Sequence record: PP601403.1
Length of the DNA stretch: 64,000 bases
Reading direction: 5' to 3' (one strand)
The notes beneath the pieces are model-generated. The model saw only the letters and a list, made by a program, of their open reading frames with translations, was not told the DNA's origin and made no database searches. Below, piece by piece: positions 24,985-34,321 of the stretch (positions are counted from its first letter, which is position 1; every line of letters starts with the position of its first letter). The translations under genes were made by a program, and so were the position numbers.

Positions 24985-25746
24985 ATGACAAATAATACCT
25001 CGGCGCTACAAGGACAACTGGTTTATCCTTGGAACCCGTTCCAAGATCTAGCGAGTAATGATATTAAAGGTGAGGTTCACCACATTCCCGCTAATGCAGC
25101 AGGAAGTATTATTATTCCTCGTTGTTCACCTTTATTCTCACGTAATGTAAAGATTAAACAACTGGATAGTTCTAGAGAGTTGTCTCTAGAAGCTGGTGAT
25201 TACTCTTTTGTTTTCCCATTTGGTAATTTCATTGGTAAGTACAATCGACTGGTATACGGCGGGATTGTAATTAACAATGTCTCTAGTCCGATTAACATTG
25301 AACTAGATTACTCAACCATTGGTGGTGACTTCGTACTTGACGAGATTAAGTACTTAGAAGCTGTAGCTAACGCTCAGATTGCACCGCGCCGCGAAGATTG
25401 GGATAAGATCATTAATCTCCCAACCGTGTGGCCGGTAGATCCTCATCCTCATCCTGCTTCCGATACTTATAACTACCAAGACATGATCACTGTCATGCGT
25501 AGCTATATTGACGCAATGTCAGGGACTGAGAACCCATTAGCTGTTCAGCAACTTCTAGAGGAACATCTCAAAGCTAATCTTCAATCTGCTCATAAAGCTG
25601 ATCTACAATCACTGGGTGTAACTAACCTGGAAGACTGGAGGATGGCAACAGTTGATGATCTAGCTGGAAGTAGTACTGAACTCCTAGTAAACGTCAATGT
25701 CCTCAAACATGCTATTCGGGGATTTGCACAAGGTACTTGGAAATAA
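24985..25746 (+). CDS. Tail-associated paralogue 1 (phiKZ gp131-like family)
   Basis: Shares the N-terminal IIP..PLF/APFY domain, WxxIxxxPxxF/WP..HxH motif and HxxxxxLGxxN motif with the next genes. Confidence 0.6.
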   Translation: MTNNTSALQGQLVYPWNPFQDLASNDIKGEVHHIPANAAGSIIIPRCSPLFSRNVKIKQLDSSRELSLEAGDYSFVFPFGNFIGKYNRLVYGGIVINNVSSPINIELDYSTIGGDFVLDEIKYLEAVANAQIAPRREDWDKIINLPTVWPVDPHPHPASDTYNYQDMITVMRSYIDAMSGTENPLAVQQLLEEHLKANLQSAHKADLQSLGVTNLEDWRMATVDDLAGSSTELLVNVNVLKHAIRGFAQGTWK

Positions 25747-25783
25747 TATCTCCGGTATTTTCTTTTAGAAGGATGTATCGTGT

Positions 25784-27058
25784 ATGATGCTAACTCCAGA
25801 TGTACCTCGTTTTAAGTTAGACCTGGAGGGAAACTCTAAGTTTAACTTTATCCCAAAAGAGTACGGTAAACGAAGTAAAGAGAAGAACAATGATATCTTT
25901 GTTCCTCAATATGCTCCGTTTTACATGAACAGTTTTAAGATGTATTTCAAAACCGGTGAACCAATGGTCCTTGACGAGGATTATGAGTTCTACGGGATTA
26001 TGTCAAAGTTAACCGAATACACTGCTAAACCAGTAGGTTTGTTTGTTAAACTACTCAAACCAGAAATTACTGAATGGTATAGTAGTTACCAAGTAGTAGG
26101 TAACTTTAACAAAGTCAATGACGATATTATTCTGATGCTAAAAGCCATTGCTGAAGATGATCGAACAGTTGACTGGAATAACATCGACGGTAAACCAGAA
26201 TGGTTTAATCCAAAACTTCACCAGCACGATCTTACTTATGAAATCTTTGGCTTTACTGATTTGATTAATGCTTGGGAAATGCTCATTGATAAAGATATCC
26301 TTGGGAAAGGTAATCTTACAATGATGTTAGAGTCATTCGAAGAGAAGCTAGATGTTTATATCAATGGATTTAAGCAACAAACAGTTAAACTCCTAGAAAG
26401 ACATAAAGCGAATAAATCGGATGGTCATGGTGTACAGAAAGATCAGATTGGTTTAGATAAACTAGATAACTTTAAAACAGCTAGTTTGAATGAGACAGTA
26501 GAAGGTAAAGCTACCGATCGACACATCACAGTTTATAATGCTGCGAAAGTAGCGACTATGATGACAGGACAGAATGCACGGTTATTAGATAGTGGCAAAC
26601 TCCCTATCTTTACCTTTGCTTGTGACCCGCTAGATCCGGTGATTACCAAATCTACTGTTCCAGGGGAATACGTTCTTTACTGTAAAGCTGTACCGATGTG
26701 TATTGTTGGCGGTAAACGTTACTCTATCCCTGAAACTATTATCGATATTACTGATACCATTACTAACCCAGTTAACAAAACTCTGTATGTTTATTTGAAC
26801 TATAAATCAGGTTCTGTTAATTACGTTATTACTGAGATTGAAACTCAGGAAACAACTAGTAATGGATTAGTTGCATTGTTGACTTGTAATGCTTCTGGAA
26901 TTAATTTCCTTGAGTGTTATGACAGGTTTACGATTGTCGGATTGGGTATTACTGATGTTAGAACTGGTAGTGCGATACTCGCCACCAATGAATCCATTTA
27001 CGCCCAAACTAATGCGAGTGATATCTTTAATAAAGCGACTGACTTGTTACCAGAATAA
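25784..27058 (+). CDS. Tail-associated paralogue 2 (tail fibre/baseplate)
   Basis: HKANKSDGHGVQKDQIGLDKLDNF tail-fibre motif; shared C-terminal domain. Confidence 0.65.
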   Translation: MMLTPDVPRFKLDLEGNSKFNFIPKEYGKRSKEKNNDIFVPQYAPFYMNSFKMYFKTGEPMVLDEDYEFYGIMSKLTEYTAKPVGLFVKLLKPEITEWYSSYQVVGNFNKVNDDIILMLKAIAEDDRTVDWNNIDGKPEWFNPKLHQHDLTYEIFGFTDLINAWEMLIDKDILGKGNLTMMLESFEEKLDVYINGFKQQTVKLLERHKANKSDGHGVQKDQIGLDKLDNFKTASLNETVEGKATDRHITVYNAAKVATMMTGQNARLLDSGKLPIFTFACDPLDPVITKSTVPGEYVLYCKAVPMCIVGGKRYSIPETIIDITDTITNPVNKTLYVYLNYKSGSVNYVITEIETQETTSNGLVALLTCNASGINFLECYDRFTIVGLGITDVRTGSAILATNESIYAQTNASDIFNKATDLLPE

Positions 27059-27069
27059 CCTTTAATTAC

Positions 27070-27103
27070 TTAGAGAGTGCGATCTTTTGATCGCACTCTC
27101 TAA
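27070..27103. terminator. Stem-loop between tail genes
   Basis: TTAGAGAGTGCGATC-TTTT-GATCGCACTCTCTAA. Confidence 0.75.
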
Positions 27104-27120
27104 TCACATCTGAGGTTCCC

Positions 27121-29709
27121 ATGAAAGATTTAAATATAGTCGATATTGACTATACGGGATCCAATTCGGCTTATCGTAAAGAAGATCTTGTCGATACTTC
27201 TACTCTTTCCGGATTTTGGATAGTACCAGAGGAAGCGCCTTTTTATACTGATTCTCTTCGTATCTTAAATGGTGGAACATTTCTAACCAAAGGTGACGAT
27301 TATGAACCAGTAGAACCAGTTACTGATTTAACTGAACTAACTGGTAAAAGTGTTTCCCTATATATCGAATTAAAACCGCACTTAGTAAACAACAAACACA
27401 ACTTAGTTGTTATCTACCAGAAAGTAGGAAGTCCTGTCATTAGTCGTAAAGTCCTATTAAAGCTTTTCGAAGATATGGGGGTTTCTGGCGGGATTGTAGA
27501 TTTCAACAAGAATGTGGTAAACATTCCTGAGACTGTTCCTAGTGCTCATCACCTGATGGATATGTCAAGCTCTGATGAGATGATTGGTTTCGGTGGACTA
27601 GTTGAACTCTTTAAACATTTTACTGCTGATGAACGTAGTAAGTATTCAGCTGTCGATGGTTTATTGGAACAAACTCAACAAGACATTTTTACCCAATTAA
27701 ATCTACAGCATAAAGTTCGTAAAGATCAACTGTTTGCTCATATTCAAAATTACCTCAATCCACACGGTTTAAAACCAAGTGATATTGAACTCGGTAATTT
27801 GAGTAACTTTAGTACCGCTCATCCTCAGCAGGACTTGGATGGCGAACGTAGTGATCTTTATTCTACCCCTTATGGTTTACGTAGAGTAATTGAAGAGACC
27901 GAACCAGATACTGATCCTTGGGTACTTCAAAACGAACTCCCGATGAGTTTCTACGGCACTGGTATTTACCTACCACCTCCTATTTACTCTGGTGTAGTGG
28001 AATCTACCACTGAATATCAGAATGGGGTTTTTGTTAAAGAAGCTAATGGTTGGATCATTGGATTAGTAAAACGAGTATACGGTGGCACTCGCGGTCTTTA
28101 TTACATTCACAATGATAAACTAATTAATCGTTATAACAAAGATAAGTTTAGACATTCCAATGAGAAATATGATCACTCTCACTTCACTACTGTTGGGTTA
28201 ACTCCTGATGCAGTGTTATCTGGTTCTGGTGATGAATTCCTTATTACACTTGATAGCGTGGCTAAACGCGGATTCATTACTTACAGCCAATCTAGTTTAG
28301 ATCCTAGAAAACACAAGTATAAAGAGATTGATTTTACTTTAATCAGGAATGCAACTGGAGCAGAAGACTTTATTGCTAATTCTCATTTTGCTAAAATTGG
28401 TGATTACATTTATTTGTTTGTAAATACTAATCAAGTAAGTGAAGAACAAGCTTTAGGTAATTATGTACCAGCTGGAACTGGTGAAGATGATCGTAGTCGT
28501 AACTGGACAACTAAGGTCTTTAGATTCCCTGTTAGTGAAGTAAGTTCTGCTAGTAGTTCTATTGTACCTACTTTGGTAACTTTGAACTACGACAACGTTG
28601 ATCGTGTCAGACGCACTAACCAGAATCGGTTTAACTTGTGTAATCATGTTAAAGGTGACGGAACTAAGTTACTCTCCTCATTAGTTAACTACAGCGCACC
28701 AGTTACTAATTCAGTTCTAGCTAAACGACGTTCTTATTTCATTGTAGAGAATCCTAATAACAAAACCCAAGCAAGAGTGAGAATTCTTGCACCACACTTC
28801 TGTAATACAGGGCAAGGTGGTAAGTACTTTGTTATTGTTGTTGATTACCTCTTTGACACTGTTACTAATACATTGACGTTAGATCCTAATTGGGTGAAAC
28901 CAACTCTGGATGTTGTTAATAACACGTTTACTAATCTCAATGAGCAACAATATCTAAAAGAGATCGCTCTAGGGTCTCTAGAAAGCTTCTGTTTAAACGG
29001 AGATGAGATGACTAATAGTTGGGTAGTCGGATTCGGTCCGATCACTGTAACGTCGTCTCAGGGCCTTAGAGATCGCATGAAGAAAATCATCGATAATGCG
29101 ATTAATGCTTGTTGGCCTAACTCTATCTTTGAACCTAAGTTAGATCTGGATGTAGTTCCACCTTTATCTGTCGTGTACTTACAAAGTAATCATTGGGATA
29201 ATCATCTTCGTGATTACGAATCCATGGGATTGCCAGTAAACCAGTTAAACGACATTGATGATCTTAATAGTTTCAGTGAAGTTATGGTTGTAGATAAAAC
29301 TGACGAGGGAATTCCTATTCCAAGTTACCCTTGGGTGCTTAGAGTAGGTGCCGATATGGAAGTGGTGTTTAATGGAATCTCTGTGAAAGCAAAACAGACC
29401 ATGTTTAACTTAAGTGGAATTGCAACTGTTTATAAAAACACTGTGTTCTATTTATACTGTATGTTAAATGGCTCTACTGGCACTTACGAGATCACTAAGC
29501 AACTTAGGTTCACTAGTGGTACACAACTACTAGTGGCTAAAGTTACCACTAATGAAACTGGCATCAGTAACATTGAACGTTATAGTCCAATTGCTATTTC
29601 CGGATTCCCGATTACTCGAGTACGAGAAACAGGCATTCCTGCCACTGAAGGAATGTTAAGTGAACCAGGTGAATACCAGTTCCTAAAAGCGTCAGAACTT
29701 ATTAGCTAA
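27121..29709 (+). CDS. Tail fibre/scaffold paralogue 3
   Basis: 862 aa; HIQNYLNPHGLKPSDIELGNLSNF motif; shared N- and C-terminal domains. Confidence 0.65.
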   Translation: MKDLNIVDIDYTGSNSAYRKEDLVDTSTLSGFWIVPEEAPFYTDSLRILNGGTFLTKGDDYEPVEPVTDLTELTGKSVSLYIELKPHLVNNKHNLVVIYQKVGSPVISRKVLLKLFEDMGVSGGIVDFNKNVVNIPETVPSAHHLMDMSSSDEMIGFGGLVELFKHFTADERSKYSAVDGLLEQTQQDIFTQLNLQHKVRKDQLFAHIQNYLNPHGLKPSDIELGNLSNFSTAHPQQDLDGERSDLYSTPYGLRRVIEETEPDTDPWVLQNELPMSFYGTGIYLPPPIYSGVVESTTEYQNGVFVKEANGWIIGLVKRVYGGTRGLYYIHNDKLINRYNKDKFRHSNEKYDHSHFTTVGLTPDAVLSGSGDEFLITLDSVAKRGFITYSQSSLDPRKHKYKEIDFTLIRNATGAEDFIANSHFAKIGDYIYLFVNTNQVSEEQALGNYVPAGTGEDDRSRNWTTKVFRFPVSEVSSASSSIVPTLVTLNYDNVDRVRRTNQNRFNLCNHVKGDGTKLLSSLVNYSAPVTNSVLAKRRSYFIVENPNNKTQARVRILAPHFCNTGQGGKYFVIVVDYLFDTVTNTLTLDPNWVKPTLDVVNNTFTNLNEQQYLKEIALGSLESFCLNGDEMTNSWVVGFGPITVTSSQGLRDRMKKIIDNAINACWPNSIFEPKLDLDVVPPLSVVYLQSNHWDNHLRDYESMGLPVNQLNDIDDLNSFSEVMVVDKTDEGIPIPSYPWVLRVGADMEVVFNGISVKAKQTMFNLSGIATVYKNTVFYLYCMLNGSTGTYEITKQLRFTSGTQLLVAKVTTNETGISNIERYSPIAISGFPITRVRETGIPATEGMLSEPGEYQFLKASELIS

Positions 29710-29767
29710 TTGTAAATAACGAAAGGGGAGGTAACACTTCCCTTCTTCCTTAAAGGAGTTGGTCTTT

Positions 29768-32700
29768 ATGTATGTTAATAAGGACAGACCTTTACCGATA
29801 TTGGAAGATAAGAAAGATCCACTAGGTGGATTAATCAACTCTTTCATTAAGGTAGAACGAGAACGTGATAAGTTACAAGGTGATCCGGCTGGACAACTAA
29901 AACAGATCGCTGATTTTAAAACTAGAATGCAAAGTAAAGTTAATACTTTTAGTAGTGATCTAAATAGTTTAATTTTAGGTCATAGTGAAGCTAAAGGTGC
30001 TTTGCACGGTGAAACTAAAGAGACGGTTGGTTTAGGTAATAAAGATAACTTTGCTATGGGTACAATCGATGATCATATTTCTGGTCTTCGAAAGGATCTG
30101 TTCTGTAATCCAGAAGGTTTAAGTTATCTTGTTAAAGATCGTGTAACTATCGATCCCAATAGTTATCTTCCAGCCAAAGCTATCCCAATTGCTTCTGGTG
30201 GAATCTTTGGTGAAGTTCCTCAGATTACTTACCATATTAACAGAAATGATACAGAGCAGAGTTCTGCTAATCCTGTTAACTACATTGGTGAGTCTAACTG
30301 GGAGTTTTGTACACCAGCTGGAATGTTCATTTATCCAATGATGAACAACTCTCCTATTGTGGGAGTATTTTCAGACGCTAGTAGTGAAGCTGCTAAAACA
30401 GTTCAAACCCCTTGGGGTGGAACTAAAGTAAGATACTACGAGAAAGGCATCGTACCAAGACGCACCAGACCTGTCACAATGACTTCCGATAAGTTAGCTG
30501 GACAAGGTGGCGGAGAGATGCTCAGAAGCGCTGAGGCGTTGTTTGAACGTTCTACGGTGCACTATCTGGAAGGTGGAGTACAAAAGGTACGAGCATTAAA
30601 TAGAAATCATCTACCTTTTGATGTGTTTGATACTGAGGAAACAAATAACAAAGCCTTTGGTGGAGTTTTTGCTTCTAGGGAAAACATGTTGTATCACATT
30701 CTGGTGGACATGGATCTTGGTGAACTATTACCTATTGACCAGAGACCAATGCTTGATTACATTGCTAACCAAGTTTGGCCTCGTTCTTCCCAGTATCCGT
30801 TTGATGAAAAGAATCGCTCTAGATTTGACTTTATTGTTAATAGGGATTTACCTCCTATCCCGGATGATCCTTATAACGGTCCGATCAGACGTTTCTTTGA
30901 TAAAGCACTAAACTTTACTTATCCGAAAGATCCAGTAAAACGGCATCGTAATAAGTTCATGGAATATATCGACCGTGGCTTGAATGCGATGTGGCCTGTT
31001 AGTAGAACTTCTATCTATAGTAGAGAGGAGTTAGAACTGGTTGATATGGTAATTAACAAGTTCTGGCCAGGACCTCGTTCTGAGAGTCAAGTTGAAGGTG
31101 AGATTATCATCAAACTAGACTTTGTTATCAGATCAATGTTGGAACGTGATTATCCGTTATCTACTAAGAGTACTGAAGGTGATGAGTTAATCTACAAAAC
31201 CAATAAGAAGTTTAGTCAACAGTTCTTAGTTCCGGCTCACGGTAAGATTACTTCTAAGCTAAGAGATACTGGTACATTAGGTTTAGATATCAAACTTAAA
31301 GATATCATTGAACACGATGTAAGTGGTTACGGTAAACTCATCAGACATATCGATAAGACACGTTGTCAATTGGTCTCTTTTGCTTGGCGTAATCGACTGG
31401 AAGGTAAGGCGACTGTTAGGTTAAGTATTGGCTGGTACACTGTTAACAAGAGTAACTATGTTCACGCTTATCTTGATTTGGATTTACATTTTGATGATAA
31501 TGCAGGAACAGTTACCTCTACCGTAAACGTTGAAACAAGTGATAGTTGGAACCGTGTTAAACAGAAACTTAATGACAATCTGGAAGTAGTTACCGAAGGT
31601 TTGTTTAAGATGTACTCTGGGGATGTAAAAGAGCAACCTACCCACCCAGCGGTGATTGGTGGGGTGTTTGAAACCCAAGGTGGTCATATGAAGTCTTATA
31701 ACTTCTATAACCGCCAGTACATTGGTTACTATCGACATGCTGTAGGTTCTACCCTTGAGTTTATTAATCAAGAGAATAACCTTATTCCAACTCCAACTGA
31801 ATACAGTTACAACATCCAGTCTGTAATTAATGGTGATATGTTCTACGGTGATCACTTACGTCATATTCCGGTTAAAGTAGATACTACTAATAAAACAGTT
31901 CTGTATCTTACCCAAACCAGGGATTGGAAGAACAACTATCGTTGGGCTTTTGTAAACGTAGAGTCAGAAACACCTGTGGTTCAACCTAATGGTTATGTTG
32001 GTCCTAAACGGTTAAGTCGTAAATGGGTAGAGGATCGTAAAGCTTACGTTCCCAGTATGCTAATTGAGAACGATGAAACAAGCGCTACGATGAACATCTC
32101 CCCAGTGGTATTTAACAACTGGAATAACTTTACTGGTTACACTAACTACACCCTTGATGAGAACTCTGATCGTCACCCAATTACGGGTGTGAACGAAGTT
32201 CAATTGAGTGTAGAAATTACTAACTGGATTAAGAACCACGTTGTGGACTGGAAGAGTAGCTATAAACAGTACTTCTTACTGCAAGGTAATTTGTATTGGA
32301 TTGTACAAACTCTTGATAGCAAAGAGATGTTATCCGATGGAACAGATTGTTACTACGGTGTTATTAAGAGCTGTAGTATTCAAACTACCCAGGAGAACAT
32401 TAAAACTGTAATTACTAATAACTCTATTGCTAGTTCTATCACAGTGAGTAAAACCAATGTCAACACCAAAGCCAGTTTAGATATCGATACTGGTTCAGTG
32501 TTTGGGTTTGATCAATTAGCAGGACTGGATGTCTACGCTTTGAAAGTATTGGATGATGCAAGGGAAACTAAGTATGAGGTTATGCTTAACGTTGCACCTT
32601 TCAATAACTTCTATGTGGAAATGAGAATTAAGATTAACAAGCAAACTGGGGAAGTTATTTTCGAACCTAAGTATGATGCTGTTGATCCTATATTCCCTTA

Positions 32701-33289
32701 CAGTACAGCAATTGGTTATCAGATTGACTACGATTCATTGAACAAGTATGGAACTAAGATTCCTCATCGTGTTCATGTTAACTATCAATCACCTGTGATG
32801 TTGAAAAAGGGCTTATCTAGTTTTAGAAAGACACCTAATAACTACGGGTTCTTTACTAAGTCAGATGGCTTCGTTGTGATCAATGGAAGAGTCGAAGATA
32901 AAGTTCAAGGTATTCCTTTATATCCGTTGGGTTCTGCTATTACCATTGGTGGTGAAACATTAGTTATTAAACAACCCATTGATTTGTTTAGTAGTGATTT
33001 TCCCACTAATGACGAACTGTTTGTAACTAGAGATAGTAACAACCAGTTTAAGGTATTTGGGCGTTATAACAACAAAGGGTTTAATATTGAACCTAGTTTG
33101 AATTGTGTTCCTGTTGGTTTTATTAATGATGGTAAGTTTACTTATCACGATCCTAACAGTTATCGCAATTCACTGTTCCCTGTATTTGAGAATAAACGTC
33201 TCAATATAGGTAATGCTGGTCAATCTATTCCAGCATTCTACGGTAAACCCGGGTCTAAAACTCCTAATAACCTTTTCTTTAAGAAATAA
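29768..33289 (+). CDS. Large tail fibre/scaffold paralogue 4 containing a 24-aa repeat array
   Basis: ATG 9 nt after AAGGAG; HSEAKGALHGETKETVGLGNKDNF motif; gp131-like C-terminus. Confidence 0.65.
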   Translation: MYVNKDRPLPILEDKKDPLGGLINSFIKVERERDKLQGDPAGQLKQIADFKTRMQSKVNTFSSDLNSLILGHSEAKGALHGETKETVGLGNKDNFAMGTIDDHISGLRKDLFCNPEGLSYLVKDRVTIDPNSYLPAKAIPIASGGIFGEVPQITYHINRNDTEQSSANPVNYIGESNWEFCTPAGMFIYPMMNNSPIVGVFSDASSEAAKTVQTPWGGTKVRYYEKGIVPRRTRPVTMTSDKLAGQGGGEMLRSAEALFERSTVHYLEGGVQKVRALNRNHLPFDVFDTEETNNKAFGGVFASRENMLYHILVDMDLGELLPIDQRPMLDYIANQVWPRSSQYPFDEKNRSRFDFIVNRDLPPIPDDPYNGPIRRFFDKALNFTYPKDPVKRHRNKFMEYIDRGLNAMWPVSRTSIYSREELELVDMVINKFWPGPRSESQVEGEIIIKLDFVIRSMLERDYPLSTKSTEGDELIYKTNKKFSQQFLVPAHGKITSKLRDTGTLGLDIKLKDIIEHDVSGYGKLIRHIDKTRCQLVSFAWRNRLEGKATVRLSIGWYTVNKSNYVHAYLDLDLHFDDNAGTVTSTVNVETSDSWNRVKQKLNDNLEVVTEGLFKMYSGDVKEQPTHPAVIGGVFETQGGHMKSYNFYNRQYIGYYRHAVGSTLEFINQENNLIPTPTEYSYNIQSVINGDMFYGDHLRHIPVKVDTTNKTVLYLTQTRDWKNNYRWAFVNVESETPVVQPNGYVGPKRLSRKWVEDRKAYVPSMLIENDETSATMNISPVVFNNWNNFTGYTNYTLDENSDRHPITGVNEVQLSVEITNWIKNHVVDWKSSYKQYFLLQGNLYWIVQTLDSKEMLSDGTDCYYGVIKSCSIQTTQENIKTVITNNSIASSITVSKTNVNTKASLDIDTGSVFGFDQLAGLDVYALKVLDDARETKYEVMLNVAPFNNFYVEMRIKINKQTGEVIFEPKYDAVDPIFPYSTAIGYQIDYDSLNKYGTKIPHRVHVNYQSPVMLKKGLSSFRKTPNNYGFFTKSDGFVVINGRVEDKVQGIPLYPLGSAITIGGETLVIKQPIDLFSSDFPTNDELFVTRDSNNQFKVFGRYNNKGFNIEPSLNCVPVGFINDGKFTYHDPNSYRNSLFPVFENKRLNIGNAGQSIPAFYGKPGSKTPNNLFFKK
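30743..31102 (+). repeat. Five degenerate tandem units of exactly 72 nt (24 aa)
   Basis: Units start at 30743, 30815, 30887, 30959 and 31031; consensus xxx[LFIV]DxxxNxx[WYL]P plus 11 variable aa. Confidence 0.85.
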
Positions 33290-33343: not shown

Positions 33344-34297
33344 TTAATGTGCAGTACTGGTATCTTGCCCGTCACCTTGTTCTCTGTGAACGTGTTTGAG
33401 CATACTGATGTCACCAGCAGAAACGTCACCACTAGATTTCATATCACCGGCAGAACTAATGCCCGCTGTGTTAGTGAGTGTTCCTGATTGGGTCATATTC
33501 CCTTCATGGGTTATATCTCCCACTAGTTTAATAGTTGGAGATTTAATAGTAGCTGAAGCTGTCGCTGACATATCAAATGTTTCACATGCAGCGGTAATAC
33601 GTTTAGCCTTCAAACCGATATGTTCTTTACCATGAAATAGGATCTCGTCTTCACAAGAAGCTATAATCTTTTTCTTATCTATAGCAAATGTAGATTTCTC
33701 TTGATTTGAAAACGACCAGAAATGTTTTATAGAGTTTAGAATGAACATGTTCTGTTCACCATCTACTAAACTGAATCCACCTTCACCAGTATCTAGTGTT
33801 ATAGCGTAATTTGTTGCTTCGCCGTTACCCTGACCGGTTAGTAATTGAATCTTTTTAGTGTGGGAAGAGATTAAGAAGATATAATAGTTATCTGGAGTTA
33901 GAGGAGCGTCTTCTTTTACATTAGGGGTGGCCGAGAAAGCGTATATAACTGTCTCTAGACGAAGTGTACCGTCCATCCCGAAGTACATCCACCTAAACAA
34001 GTTCTGACCTTTAAACTTATAGACTACAACTTTACTACCTTTTCTGACATCAGGGGCTGTTATCCTATTGGTATTAAAAGGTAACCACTTCATCATTACA
34101 GCGTTAGAACTTAATCCAGAACTGGAGGTAGTATCTCCTGTCGGGGATTGTATTGTTACATCTTTCTTTTCTGCTTGGGCTACTACTTCTCCATCTGCTT
34201 CTGGATATAGAGAAGGAAGATATACCAATACTTCATCAGTGTCAGTAGCTTTATCCTCAGCTACTGTAGCAACACCATAACACTCTAATACATTCAT
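33344..34297 (-). CDS. Baseplate central spike (phiKZ gp164 / phi92 gp138 / P2 gpV-like)
   Basis: OB-fold-like N-terminus, beta-helix-like repeats and a terminal KHVH metal-binding apex motif. Confidence 0.8.
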   Translation of the reverse strand: MNVLECYGVATVAEDKATDTDEVLVYLPSLYPEADGEVVAQAEKKDVTIQSPTGDTTSSSGLSSNAVMMKWLPFNTNRITAPDVRKGSKVVVYKFKGQNLFRWMYFGMDGTLRLETVIYAFSATPNVKEDAPLTPDNYYIFLISSHTKKIQLLTGQGNGEATNYAITLDTGEGGFSLVDGEQNMFILNSIKHFWSFSNQEKSTFAIDKKKIIASCEDEILFHGKEHIGLKAKRITAACETFDMSATASATIKSPTIKLVGDITHEGNMTQSGTLTNTAGISSAGDMKSSGDVSAGDISMLKHVHREQGDGQDTSTAH

Positions 34298-34321
34298 AAC
34301 GAACATCCTTAAGAGGAATCT

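What the first reader, a model, noticed from the sequence alone, without database searches (positions are those of the whole stretch)
30743..31102. Exact 24-aa periodic array of helix-Trp-Pro motifs inside the giant tail scaffold protein
Seen: five units at an exact 72-nt period: RPMLDYIANQVWP-RSSQYPFDEKN, RSRFDFIVNRDLP-PIPDDPYNGPI, RRFFDKALNFTYP-KDPVKRHRNKF, MEYIDRGLNAMWP-VSRTSIYSREE, LELVDMVINKFWP-GPRSESQVEGE. Asp5, Asn9 and Pro13 are invariant, positions 4 and 12 are always hydrophobic, and the 11-aa spacers are unrelated. Degenerate flanking copies (VDMDLGELLP, IRSMLERDYP) lie 16 and 29 aa away. DNA identity between units is low, so period and key residues appear selected at protein level. 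I recognise no named repeat family for it. Inference: a rack of related but distinct binding helices.
Basis: partly seen in the sequence, partly recalled or inferred. Interest (0 to 1): 0.8.

Follow-up and report, generated by a model that had tools for sequence, protein, structure and literature searches.

The report
Portable helix-Trp-Pro cassette array, tail fibre
A jumbo Aeromonas phage tail-fibre protein carries five tandem copies of a short, strongly conserved helix-Trp-Pro peptide in an exposed loop, and single copies of the same peptide sit at four other sites in neighbouring or related tail proteins, so it looks like a portable binding peptide whose partner is unknown.

Summary
Residues 326-445 of the 1173-aa protein (window 29768-33289, Aeromonas phage ACP1) are five exact 24-aa units. 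Asp5, Asn9 and Pro13 are invariant, and the periodicity is far beyond chance (z=11.5).

The protein is not a giant scaffold. It belongs to the phiKZ gp131-type tail-fibre gene cluster of a chimallivirus.

All 55 homologues from other genera have 70-79 residues where ACP1 and its 10 close relatives have 194-195. The array is therefore a lineage-specific insertion of about 118 aa, placed in a beta-hairpin turn. It has five units in every Ferozepurvirus-like sequence seen.

New finding: the 13-aa motif half is portable. Single copies occur as clean insertions or extensions at four other sites:
- one in the adjacent ACP1 tail gene;
- two in the Chaoshanvirus homologue;
- one at the C-terminus of the Chaoshanvirus upstream protein.

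AlphaFold gives short helices with very low confidence (pLDDT 20-37) between confident domains. Yet dN/dS is 0.037, as low as in the folded parts.

No named repeat family, solved structure or bacterial gene matches.

Best reading: surface-displayed docking peptides, here made multivalent. The partner is unknown. A closed five-repeat fold is the main rival.

The parts
29768..33289 (+). Host gene: 1173-aa tail-fibre-cluster protein (ACP1_0205, WZX10494.1; 'tail protein' in RefSeq relatives). Homologue of OBP gp145 and the 'BspA-LRR' proteins of other chimalliviruses, but without their LRR tail.
   Evidence: 100% match to PP601403.1. Full-length homologues at 36-40% identity lie next to the baseplate assembly gene in 14 fetched jumbo-phage loci. 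AF2 gives pTM 0.76.
29819..30142 (+). N-terminal helical segment (residues 18-125) shared with the three upstream paralogues. It corresponds to the distal part of the gp131-type N-terminal module.
   Evidence: PHROG families 14667, 3573 and 13857 match residues 47-145 and are shared with the neighbours. See also the alignment, the helices H18-37 and H40-74, and the hit of the neighbour's module to PHIKZ131.
30215..30724 (+). Conserved beta-rich module before the array (residues 150-319). Its last strand is residues 307-316.
   Evidence: AF2 pLDDT is 72-93. It is conserved in all 55 distant homologues.
30704..30733 (+). Degenerate 'unit 0' (residues 313-322), at the ancestral edge of the insertion. 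It shares four consecutive residues (LVDM) and the final Pro with unit 5.
30743..30814 (+). Unit 1 (residues 326-349).
   Evidence: Predicted helix 323-336.
30815..30886 (+). Unit 2 (residues 350-373). It has Leu-Pro instead of Trp-Pro and a Pro-rich spacer.
30887..30958 (+). Unit 3 (residues 374-397). It has Tyr-Pro and a basic spacer.
   Evidence: Predicted helix 373-379.
30959..31030 (+). Unit 4 (residues 398-421).
31031..31102 (+). Unit 5 (residues 422-445). Its spacer aligns with the ancestral turn of the other genera.
   Evidence: Predicted helix 419-431.
31106..33235 (+). Conserved C-terminal beta-rich module (residues 447-1156), propeller-like.
   Evidence: phrog_17273 matches with E=9e-224. 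AF2 pLDDT is 80-96. Foldseek hits are beta-propeller proteins and the phage P68 tail fibre, all weak.
27121..29709 (+). Upstream paralogue (862 aa, ACP1_0204), with a gp131-type N-terminal module.
29065..29151 (+). Sixth cassette of the genome. It is a 29-aa insertion (about residues 649-677) in the upstream paralogue, absent from all 12 distant homologues.
   Evidence: AF2 gives helix 647-664 followed by a low-confidence coil, between confident strands 639-645 and 682-687.
24985..27058 (+). Two shorter paralogues (253 and 424 aa) sharing the N-terminal module.
33344..34306 (-). Divergently placed baseplate assembly protein gene, a conserved neighbour in all relatives.
   Evidence: phrog_3216 matches with E=3e-87. 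Synteny is shown.

Best explanation
What it is (shown).
- It is a lineage-specific five-fold tandem expansion of a portable peptide cassette.
- The cassette has a 13-residue amphipathic helix carrying an invariant Asp and Asn one turn apart and ending in aromatic-Pro. A hydrophilic spacer of about 11 residues follows.
- The array sits in the turn of a beta hairpin of a tail-fibre-cluster protein of the chimallivirus Aeromonas phage ACP1.

How it most likely works (inferred).
- The cassettes are flexible, surface-displayed docking peptides that become ordered only on binding a partner.
- The conserved stripe Asp5-Asn9 and the hydrophobic stripe at positions 4, 8 and 12 would form the contact face. 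Pro13 stops the helix.
- The five units, each with its own conserved spacer, would give five adjacent but non-identical docking sites on each chain.
- The most likely partner is another protein of the peripheral baseplate or fibre network. Both genes that carry cassettes belong to the gp131-type fibre cluster.
- Chimallivirus fibres are already known or predicted to assemble through short N-terminal or linker segments.
For: Shown:
- Periodicity z=11.5.
- The array is an insertion. Between two conserved anchors, ACP1 and its 10 close relatives have 194-195 residues and all 55 distant homologues have 70-79.
- A HMMER search of 1.84 billion representative proteins with residues 226-520 finds the array only in its own cluster.
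- There are five units without indels in 12 Ferozepurvirus proteins, in PS2, and in 4 metagenome contigs.

Portability:
- The motif occurs once more in the 236-kb genome, in the adjacent tail gene, inside a 29-aa insertion. For that protein alone P=0.0065.
- In Chaoshanviruses it occurs in 37-38-aa insertions after the equivalents of residues 37 and 709 of the homologue. Column occupancy there is 3/66 and 2/66. It also forms the C-terminal extension of the upstream protein.
- Non-Ferozepurvirus homologues give 6 regex hits, against 0.58 expected.
- The motif halves of the two genera are alike (z=6.0, 0 of 5000 permutations reach the observed score). The spacers are not.
- All insertion sites are turns, helix junctions or a terminus in the models.

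Flexibility:
- pLDDT is 20-37 over residues 320-443, between domains at 80-95.
- The single cassette is modelled as a helix plus a low-confidence coil.
- The spacers have 36% charged residues and 13% Pro, with hydropathy below the order/disorder boundary.
- The helical hydrophobic moment is 0.40-0.64 and exceeds the strand moment in all five units, though only marginally in unit 2 (0.46 versus 0.45).

Constraint:
- dN/dS is 0.037 for the array (motif halves 0.030, spacers 0.048). It is 0.037 for the N-terminal part (residues 1-319) and 0.088 for the C-terminal part.
- The three ZPAH34 copies keep 53-56% amino-acid identity, while most of their shared residues use different codons.

Context:
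- The neighbour's N-terminal module hits PHIKZ131.
- The phiKZ fibres assemble through N-terminal segments of gp131 paralogues (PMC13250141).
- Goslar DUF7941 proteins are predicted to dock a disordered linker onto the next protomer (PMC13742148).
Against: - No partner was identified. Only single chains could be modelled.
- The low AlphaFold confidence may reflect the shallow alignment over the array (11 near-identical rows) rather than true disorder.
- The spacers are nearly as constrained as the motifs. The period is exact and the copy number fixed. All three features are more typical of a folded repeat domain than of a string of linear motifs.
- Both ends of the array are anchored on adjacent strands, which a closed fold would explain naturally.
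- Presence of the protein in the virion was not checked for this phage.
Confidence: 0.42

Rival explanations
1. The five units fold together, alone or across the chains of an oligomer, into a compact closed repeat domain. In that domain ring or bundle closure fixes the number at five. It would act as a structural knob or spacer on the fibre, and single-chain prediction with a shallow alignment simply failed to find it.
For: - The period is exact, there are no indels, and there are always five units.
- The spacers are under purifying selection as strong as in folded domains.
- The insert starts and ends on adjacent strands, so its ends must meet.
- The alignment depth over the array is only 11 close rows.
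Against: - The same motif works as a single copy in loops and at a C-terminus of other proteins, so it does not need four siblings.
- pLDDT is 20-37, while regular repeats are usually modelled even from few sequences.
- The spacers are hydrophilic, Pro-rich and unrelated to each other.
- No fold match was found.
Confidence: 0.27
2. The cassettes bind the host surface (a glycan or a surface protein of Aeromonas) rather than a phage protein. The array would then be a multivalent low-affinity adhesin for first contact.
For: - All cassette-bearing phages infect Aeromonas.
- The invariant residues (Asp, Asn, Trp or another aromatic) are of the types typical of sugar-binding sites (established knowledge).
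- The Ferozepurvirus proteins have lost the LRR tail and about 400 aa that homologues carry, so a replacement binding function is conceivable.
- The cassettes are exposed on fibre proteins.
Against: - Aeromonas phages of the genus Ludhianavirus (D3, D6) have homologues without cassettes.
- The hosts span four Aeromonas species while the motif is nearly unchanged.
- One copy sits at the junction of the N-terminal helices, which are expected to be buried in the fibre base.
- Nothing comparable was found in 185,579 bacterial genomes, so there is no sign of mimicry of a host protein.
Confidence: 0.18
3. The array is a neutral or nearly neutral expansion of a loop, a tolerated duplication with no function of its own.
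For: It is absent from all other genera, which function without it. It is predicted to be disordered.
Against: - dN/dS is 0.037 with saturated synonymous divergence between units.
- There is no loss or gain of units in any relative.
- The same motif recurs at four other sites.
Confidence: 0.03

Closest known systems
phiKZ gp131 and its paralogues gp132-135 (tail-fibre proteins joined through their N-terminal segments; PMC13250141)
   Same: - A cluster of adjacent paralogues shares an N-terminal module beside baseplate genes.
- The upstream ACP1 paralogue hits PHIKZ131 over residues 32-251.
- The C-terminal part is beta-propeller-like.
- Assembly through short helical segments is the documented principle.
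   Different: - The docking segments of phiKZ are N-terminal and occur once per chain.
- Here the peptide is an internal loop insertion repeated five times, and it has no sequence likeness to the N-terminal module.
- The homology of the array-bearing protein itself to gp131 is only transitive.
Chimallivirus DUF7941 'fibre cloud' proteins of phage Goslar (PMC13742148)
   Same: - They are peripheral-baseplate proteins of the same virus family.
- A disordered linear segment of one protomer is predicted to dock on a globular domain of the next.
- Some members carry LRR or carbohydrate-binding tails, as the homologues here do.
   Different: - No DUF7941 match was found in this protein or its neighbours with the Pfam copy at hand.
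- The Goslar contact is a beta-strand addition, not an amphipathic helix.
- No tandem array is described.
Leucine-rich repeats (period about 24, invariant Asn)
   Same: A period of 24 residues, one invariant Asn per unit, and regularly spaced hydrophobic residues. Homologues of this protein carry BspA-type LRRs elsewhere.
   Different: - The hydrophobic spacing is i, i+3/4, i+8 (helical), not LxxLxL.
- Asp and Pro are invariant.
- There is no Pfam LRR hit.
- It is predicted as helix or coil, not a beta solenoid.
- ACP1 lacks the BspA region altogether.
Branched fibre and tailspike systems that dock through dedicated adaptor segments (CBA120 TSP1-4, G7C gp63.1/gp66, phiKp24; own knowledge and PMC9700779)
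   Same: The idea of several receptor-binding proteins hung on one carrier through short dedicated segments.
   Different: Those adaptors are folded domains at N-termini. No 24-aa tandem peptide array is known there. No partner is shown here.
Tandem arrays of short linear motifs in disordered regions (general concept)
   Same: A short conserved island with helical propensity in a low-confidence, hydrophilic, Pro-rich context. The motif recurs at unrelated positions.
   Different: Here the spacers are also strongly conserved, and the spacing is exact to the residue.

Membership tests
phiKZ gp131-type tail-fibre paralogue family | N-terminal module homologous to the gp131 N-terminus | tested here: inconclusive
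   The upstream paralogue (window 27121-27900) hits PHIKZ131 (E=1e-3, residues 32-251), PhiPA3 gp150 and Psa21. The array-bearing protein shares only the distal ~100 residues with its neighbours and does not hit phiKZ itself.
phiKZ gp131-type tail-fibre paralogue family | Cluster of adjacent paralogues next to baseplate genes | tested here: met
   There are four adjacent genes at 24985-33289, followed by the baseplate assembly gene. The same order is seen in ZPAH34, OBP, Kc263 and PS1.
phiKZ gp131-type tail-fibre paralogue family | C-terminal beta-propeller | tested here: inconclusive
   The AF2 model of residues 447-1156 is beta-rich and confident. Foldseek hits are propeller proteins with low TM-scores, and the solved gp131 domain is not among the listed top 50 matches.
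phiKZ gp131-type tail-fibre paralogue family | Presence in the virion at the fibre position | not testable with these tools
   No proteome or map of a Ferozepurvirus was found.
BspA-type leucine-rich repeat surface proteins (annotation of the homologues) | DUF285/PF03382 repeats | tested here: not met
   There is no PF03382 hit in the ACP1 protein. It ends where the LRR extension of the homologues begins.
Leucine-rich repeat (for the array itself) | LxxLxLxxN core forming a beta strand, with a match to an LRR profile | tested here: not met
   No Pfam hit for residues 305-471 at E<=1. The hydrophobic moment is helical. The model shows helix or coil.
DUF7941 proteins of chimalliviruses | Match to the DUF7941 profile | tested here: inconclusive
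   There is no hit in this protein, its pieces or its neighbours. Whether the Pfam copy at hand holds the model is unknown.
Linear-motif (fold-on-binding) peptide arrays | Motif lies in a region without stable predicted structure | tested here: met
   pLDDT is 20-37 over residues 320-443 and 39-48 over the single cassette. The spacer composition is consistent with disorder.
Linear-motif (fold-on-binding) peptide arrays | Motif recurs independently in different sequence contexts | tested here: met
   Five sites in two proteins of two or three lineages.
Linear-motif (fold-on-binding) peptide arrays | Flanks evolve faster than the motif | tested here: inconclusive
   The spacers differ completely between units and between genera. 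Within the genus, however, they are nearly as constrained as the motif (dN/dS 0.048 against 0.030).
Linear-motif (fold-on-binding) peptide arrays | A defined binding partner | not testable with these tools
   Only single-chain prediction was available.

The most novel reading that the evidence does not exclude
The cassette is a general 'plug' of Aeromonas chimalliviruses. It would be a transferable 13-residue helix that any tail protein can acquire in a loop or at an end in order to be wired into the fibre network. In the Ferozepurvirus lineage the fibre protein lost its covalently attached LRR receptor-binding tail. It would instead carry a five-socket rack that recruits separately encoded binding proteins, a switch from fused to docked receptor-binding modules.
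Probability: 0.15. Interest if true: 0.8.

Novelty: new variant of a known kind. Interest (0 to 1): 0.55.

Why it matters
The outer baseplate and fibres of nucleus-forming jumbo phages are the least resolved part of their virions. Both recent atlases (phiKZ, Goslar) leave them largely unmodelled.

A short peptide has been inserted at five different permissive sites of two fibre proteins, amplified five-fold in one lineage, and held under selection as strong as in folded domains. It is a concrete sequence handle on how that network is wired. If it is a docking peptide, it gives a simple rule for reading fibre connectivity from genomes. If it is a folded five-repeat domain, it is a new small fold.

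Either way it is an example of a portable peptide module spreading within tail genes at protein level, with no trace of a DNA-level mobile element.

Tried and rejected
- **Named families.** Pfam, NCBIfam, PADLOC-independent PHROG function labels, and PDB by sequence with a single protein and with two profiles all gave nothing for the array.
- **Fold searches.** Searches of the full model match only the flanking domains.
- **DNA-level repeat or mobile element.** Rejected. Tandem Repeats Finder finds nothing, and most residues shared between copies use different codons.
- **tblastn of the 120-aa array against 50,697 phage records.** Only Ferozepurviruses match. A hit in Klebsiella phage phiKp_32 and Stenotrophomonas phage BUCTxx100 (E=0.08) showed no 24-aa periodicity and was dropped as chance.
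- **IMG/VR scan for the Chaoshanvirus-type cassette.** 0 hits.
- **IMG/VR scan for three Asp-4-Asn-4-Pro units at 72 nt.** 33 loci, none related. They are Pro-rich low-complexity stretches, HEAT-like repeats, non-coding frames, and an unrelated 24-aa repeat of large viral contigs.
- **Metagenome scan for two adjacent Trp-Pro units.** Only four Ferozepurvirus-like contigs, each with the same five units.
- **Bacterial and archaeal genomes.** 0 hits for either pattern, so there is no sign of a host homologue or of mimicry.
- **Local profile of the 14-residue core.** It found no further copies above the known ones in any sequence held.
- **Origin of the array.** Local duplication of the ancestral hairpin edge is suggested by the shared four residues of unit 0 and unit 5. 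It cannot be separated from import of a cassette followed by amplification.
Full report
**Identity of the window and the gene.**
The window is the last 64 kb of Aeromonas phage ACP1 (PP601403.1, 100% identity, genus Ferozepurvirus, 236 kb). The genome encodes a tubulin and a phiKZ-like internal head protein. Its relatives are OBP, EL, AH04, N1M2, pEt-SU and Goslar-type phages. It is therefore a chimallivirus-type jumbo phage.

The finding lies in gene 29768-33289 (+), which encodes 1173 aa and is annotated 'hypothetical', or 'tail protein' in RefSeq relatives.

Coordinates 30743-31102 are in frame and give residues 326-445 as five 24-residue units.
- Asp at position 5, Asn at 9 and Pro at 13 are present in 5/5 units. 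Positions 4, 8 and 12 are always hydrophobic or aromatic.
- Lag 24 is the only positive lag. The sum-of-pairs score is +139, against -249 +/- 34 for shuffles (z=11.5).
- A scan of the whole protein over all periods 8-60 puts period 24 at residue 324 far above every other value and above whole-protein shuffles.
- At DNA level nothing is left. Tandem Repeats Finder finds no repeat, and 8 of 72 columns are invariant.

**What the protein is.**
It is the last of four adjacent genes (24985-33289) that share an N-terminal segment. A divergently placed baseplate assembly gene follows.

The N-terminal 260 residues of the upstream paralogue hit PHIKZ131, PhiPA3 gp150, Psa21, Goslar and RAY virion or tail proteins. 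In the phiKZ atlas, gp131 and its paralogues build the fibres through their N-terminal segments, and gp131 ends in a seven-bladed propeller (PMC13250141).

The AlphaFold model of the ACP1 protein (66-row alignment, pTM 0.76) has these parts:
- long N-terminal helices at residues 18-74;
- a confident beta module at residues 150-319;
- a confident beta-rich module at residues 447-1156. Its fold matches are propeller proteins and a phage tail fibre, all weak. Its viral matches are about 1200-aa chimallivirus virion proteins.

'Giant tail scaffold' is therefore not an apt description. 'Tail-fibre-cluster protein' is.

**The array is a lineage-specific insertion.**
Full-length homologues at 36-44% identity exist in many chimalliviruses and metagenomes.
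- In an alignment of 66 proteins, the stretch between two conserved anchors (Gly299 and Lys493) is 194-195 residues in ACP1 and its 10 close relatives. It is 70-79 residues in all 55 others (also with 14 phage loci).
- The gap of about 118 residues coincides with the array.
- In the model the array leaves strand 307-316 and returns to strand 447-456, so it is an excursion from a hairpin turn.
- A HMMER search of 1.84 billion representative proteins with residues 226-520 found the array only in its own cluster. The five other hits cover only residues preceding it.
- Within the clade (12 proteins at 84-98% identity, plus PS2 and four metagenome contigs) there are always five units and no indel. 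Each unit keeps its own identity.

**The unit is portable. This is the main new result.**
I searched for a simple descriptor of the conserved columns: hydrophobic, Asp, two free positions, aliphatic, Asn, two free positions, hydrophobic, Pro.

In the whole ACP1 genome it occurs only six times. Five are the array. The sixth is in the adjacent upstream tail gene at window 29089. There it lies in a clean 29-residue insertion absent from all 12 distant homologues. The chance of a hit in that protein alone is 0.0065.

Among the 55 non-Ferozepurvirus homologues the descriptor hits six times, against 0.58 expected. Five of these hits are in precise lineage-specific insertions:
- a 37-residue insertion after the equivalent of residue 37, in ZPAH34, CF8 and an AhC3_1-like protein;
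- a 38-residue insertion after the equivalent of residue 709, in ZPAH34 and CF8.

Direct translation of the AerS_266 locus shows the same two insertions there.

In all three Chaoshanviruses the upstream protein, which is the homologue of the ACP1 neighbour, ends in a further copy as a C-terminal extension. The AhC3_1 protein does not. tblastn finds exactly three places per Chaoshanvirus genome.

The motif halves of Ferozepurvirus and Chaoshanvirus copies are alike far beyond column-permuted controls (z=6.0, 0 of 5000). The spacers are not.

All sites are turns, a junction between helices, or a terminus.

The three ZPAH34 copies are 53-56% identical in protein, but most shared residues use different codons. 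The spread is therefore old and maintained at protein level. It is not a recent DNA element.

**Structure and constraint.**
- AlphaFold gives pLDDT 20-37 over residues 320-443, with short helices only in units 1, 3 and 5.
- The single cassette of the neighbour is a helix (647-664) ending at Trp, followed by a low-confidence coil between confident strands.
- The motif halves have helical hydrophobic moments of 0.40-0.64, above the strand moment in every unit (only marginally in unit 2). The spacers are 36% charged and 13% Pro, and fall below the order/disorder hydropathy boundary.
- Yet among four Ferozepurvirus genomes dN/dS is 0.037 for the array (motif halves 0.030, spacers 0.048). That equals the N-terminal part (residues 1-319) and is lower than the C-terminal part at 0.088.

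**Interpretation.**
A short amphipathic helix with two invariant polar residues one turn apart, stopped by Pro, is displayed at permissive sites, functions as a single copy in several contexts, and is under strong selection. This is best read as a binding peptide.

Two points suggest that the partner is a phage protein of the fibre or baseplate network:
- both cassette-bearing genes are members of the fibre cluster;
- chimallivirus fibres are known or predicted to assemble through short segments.

This last step is inference. No partner was found, and only single chains could be modelled.

The main rival is a compact closed five-repeat domain missed by the prediction. Exact spacing, fixed number, constrained spacers and adjacent ends all favour it. 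The single-copy occurrences argue against it.

Binding of a host surface component is a further possibility. Neutral expansion is nearly excluded.

**Comparison with known systems.**
- The array is not a leucine-rich repeat. The spacing is helical, no profile matches, and no solenoid is predicted.
- It is not part of the BspA repeats of its homologues, which ACP1 lacks.
- It has no DUF7941 match.
- It resembles the docking logic of gp131 paralogues and of DUF7941 proteins without being a member of either by any test I could run.
- I found no description of this motif in the papers searched. That is not an exhaustive search.

In notebook entry 3 I wrote a consensus-like pattern of the Chaoshanvirus cassette, contrary to the operators' rule. 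It was used only for the degenerate search patterns.

Noticed in passing
window 29065-29151 (in gene 27121-29709): A sixth copy of the cassette lies in the adjacent upstream tail gene. It is a 29-aa insertion absent from all 12 distant homologues. It is predicted as a helix ending at Trp-Pro, followed by a coil.
   Followed up: yes
window 29768-33289 and 27121-29709: Both Ferozepurvirus proteins are shortened relative to their homologues. The 1173-aa protein lacks the C-terminal BspA/DUF285 LRR extension carried by 50 of 55 homologues. The 862-aa neighbour lacks about 400 aa present in its 1230-1293-aa homologues.
   Followed up: partly
L003 2337-2444, L008 1-138, L007 1-141: In the three Chaoshanviruses (ZPAH34, CF8, AerS_266) the protein encoded upstream of the homologue ends in a cassette as a C-terminal extension of about 37 aa. 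The AhC3_1 protein (L013 2-100) ends without it.
   Followed up: yes
window 24985-29709: Three upstream genes (253, 424 and 862 aa) share an N-terminal module of about 250 aa. By tblastn this module reaches PHIKZ131, PhiPA3 gp150, Goslar and RAY proteins. This is the gp131-type fibre paralogue cluster of this phage.
   Followed up: partly
L023 234-3578, also L035, L039, L042, L043, L052, L054 (IMG/VR contigs): Long arrays of an unrelated 24-aa repeat (two Asn-Pro pairs and Pro-Trp-x-Trp per unit) fill several adjacent ORFs of large viral contigs. No Pfam family reaches its cut-off.
   Followed up: partly
window 29759-29768: The mechanical ORF list starts the gene at a TTG three codons upstream of the ATG. 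The GenBank and RefSeq records use the ATG (29768), and the homologues align from that Met.
   Followed up: partly
window 1-64000: The window ends exactly at the end of the linear ACP1 record (window position 1 = record position 172166). Besides tail genes it holds RuvC-like, SbcC-like, DNA ligase and RNase H genes.
   Followed up: no
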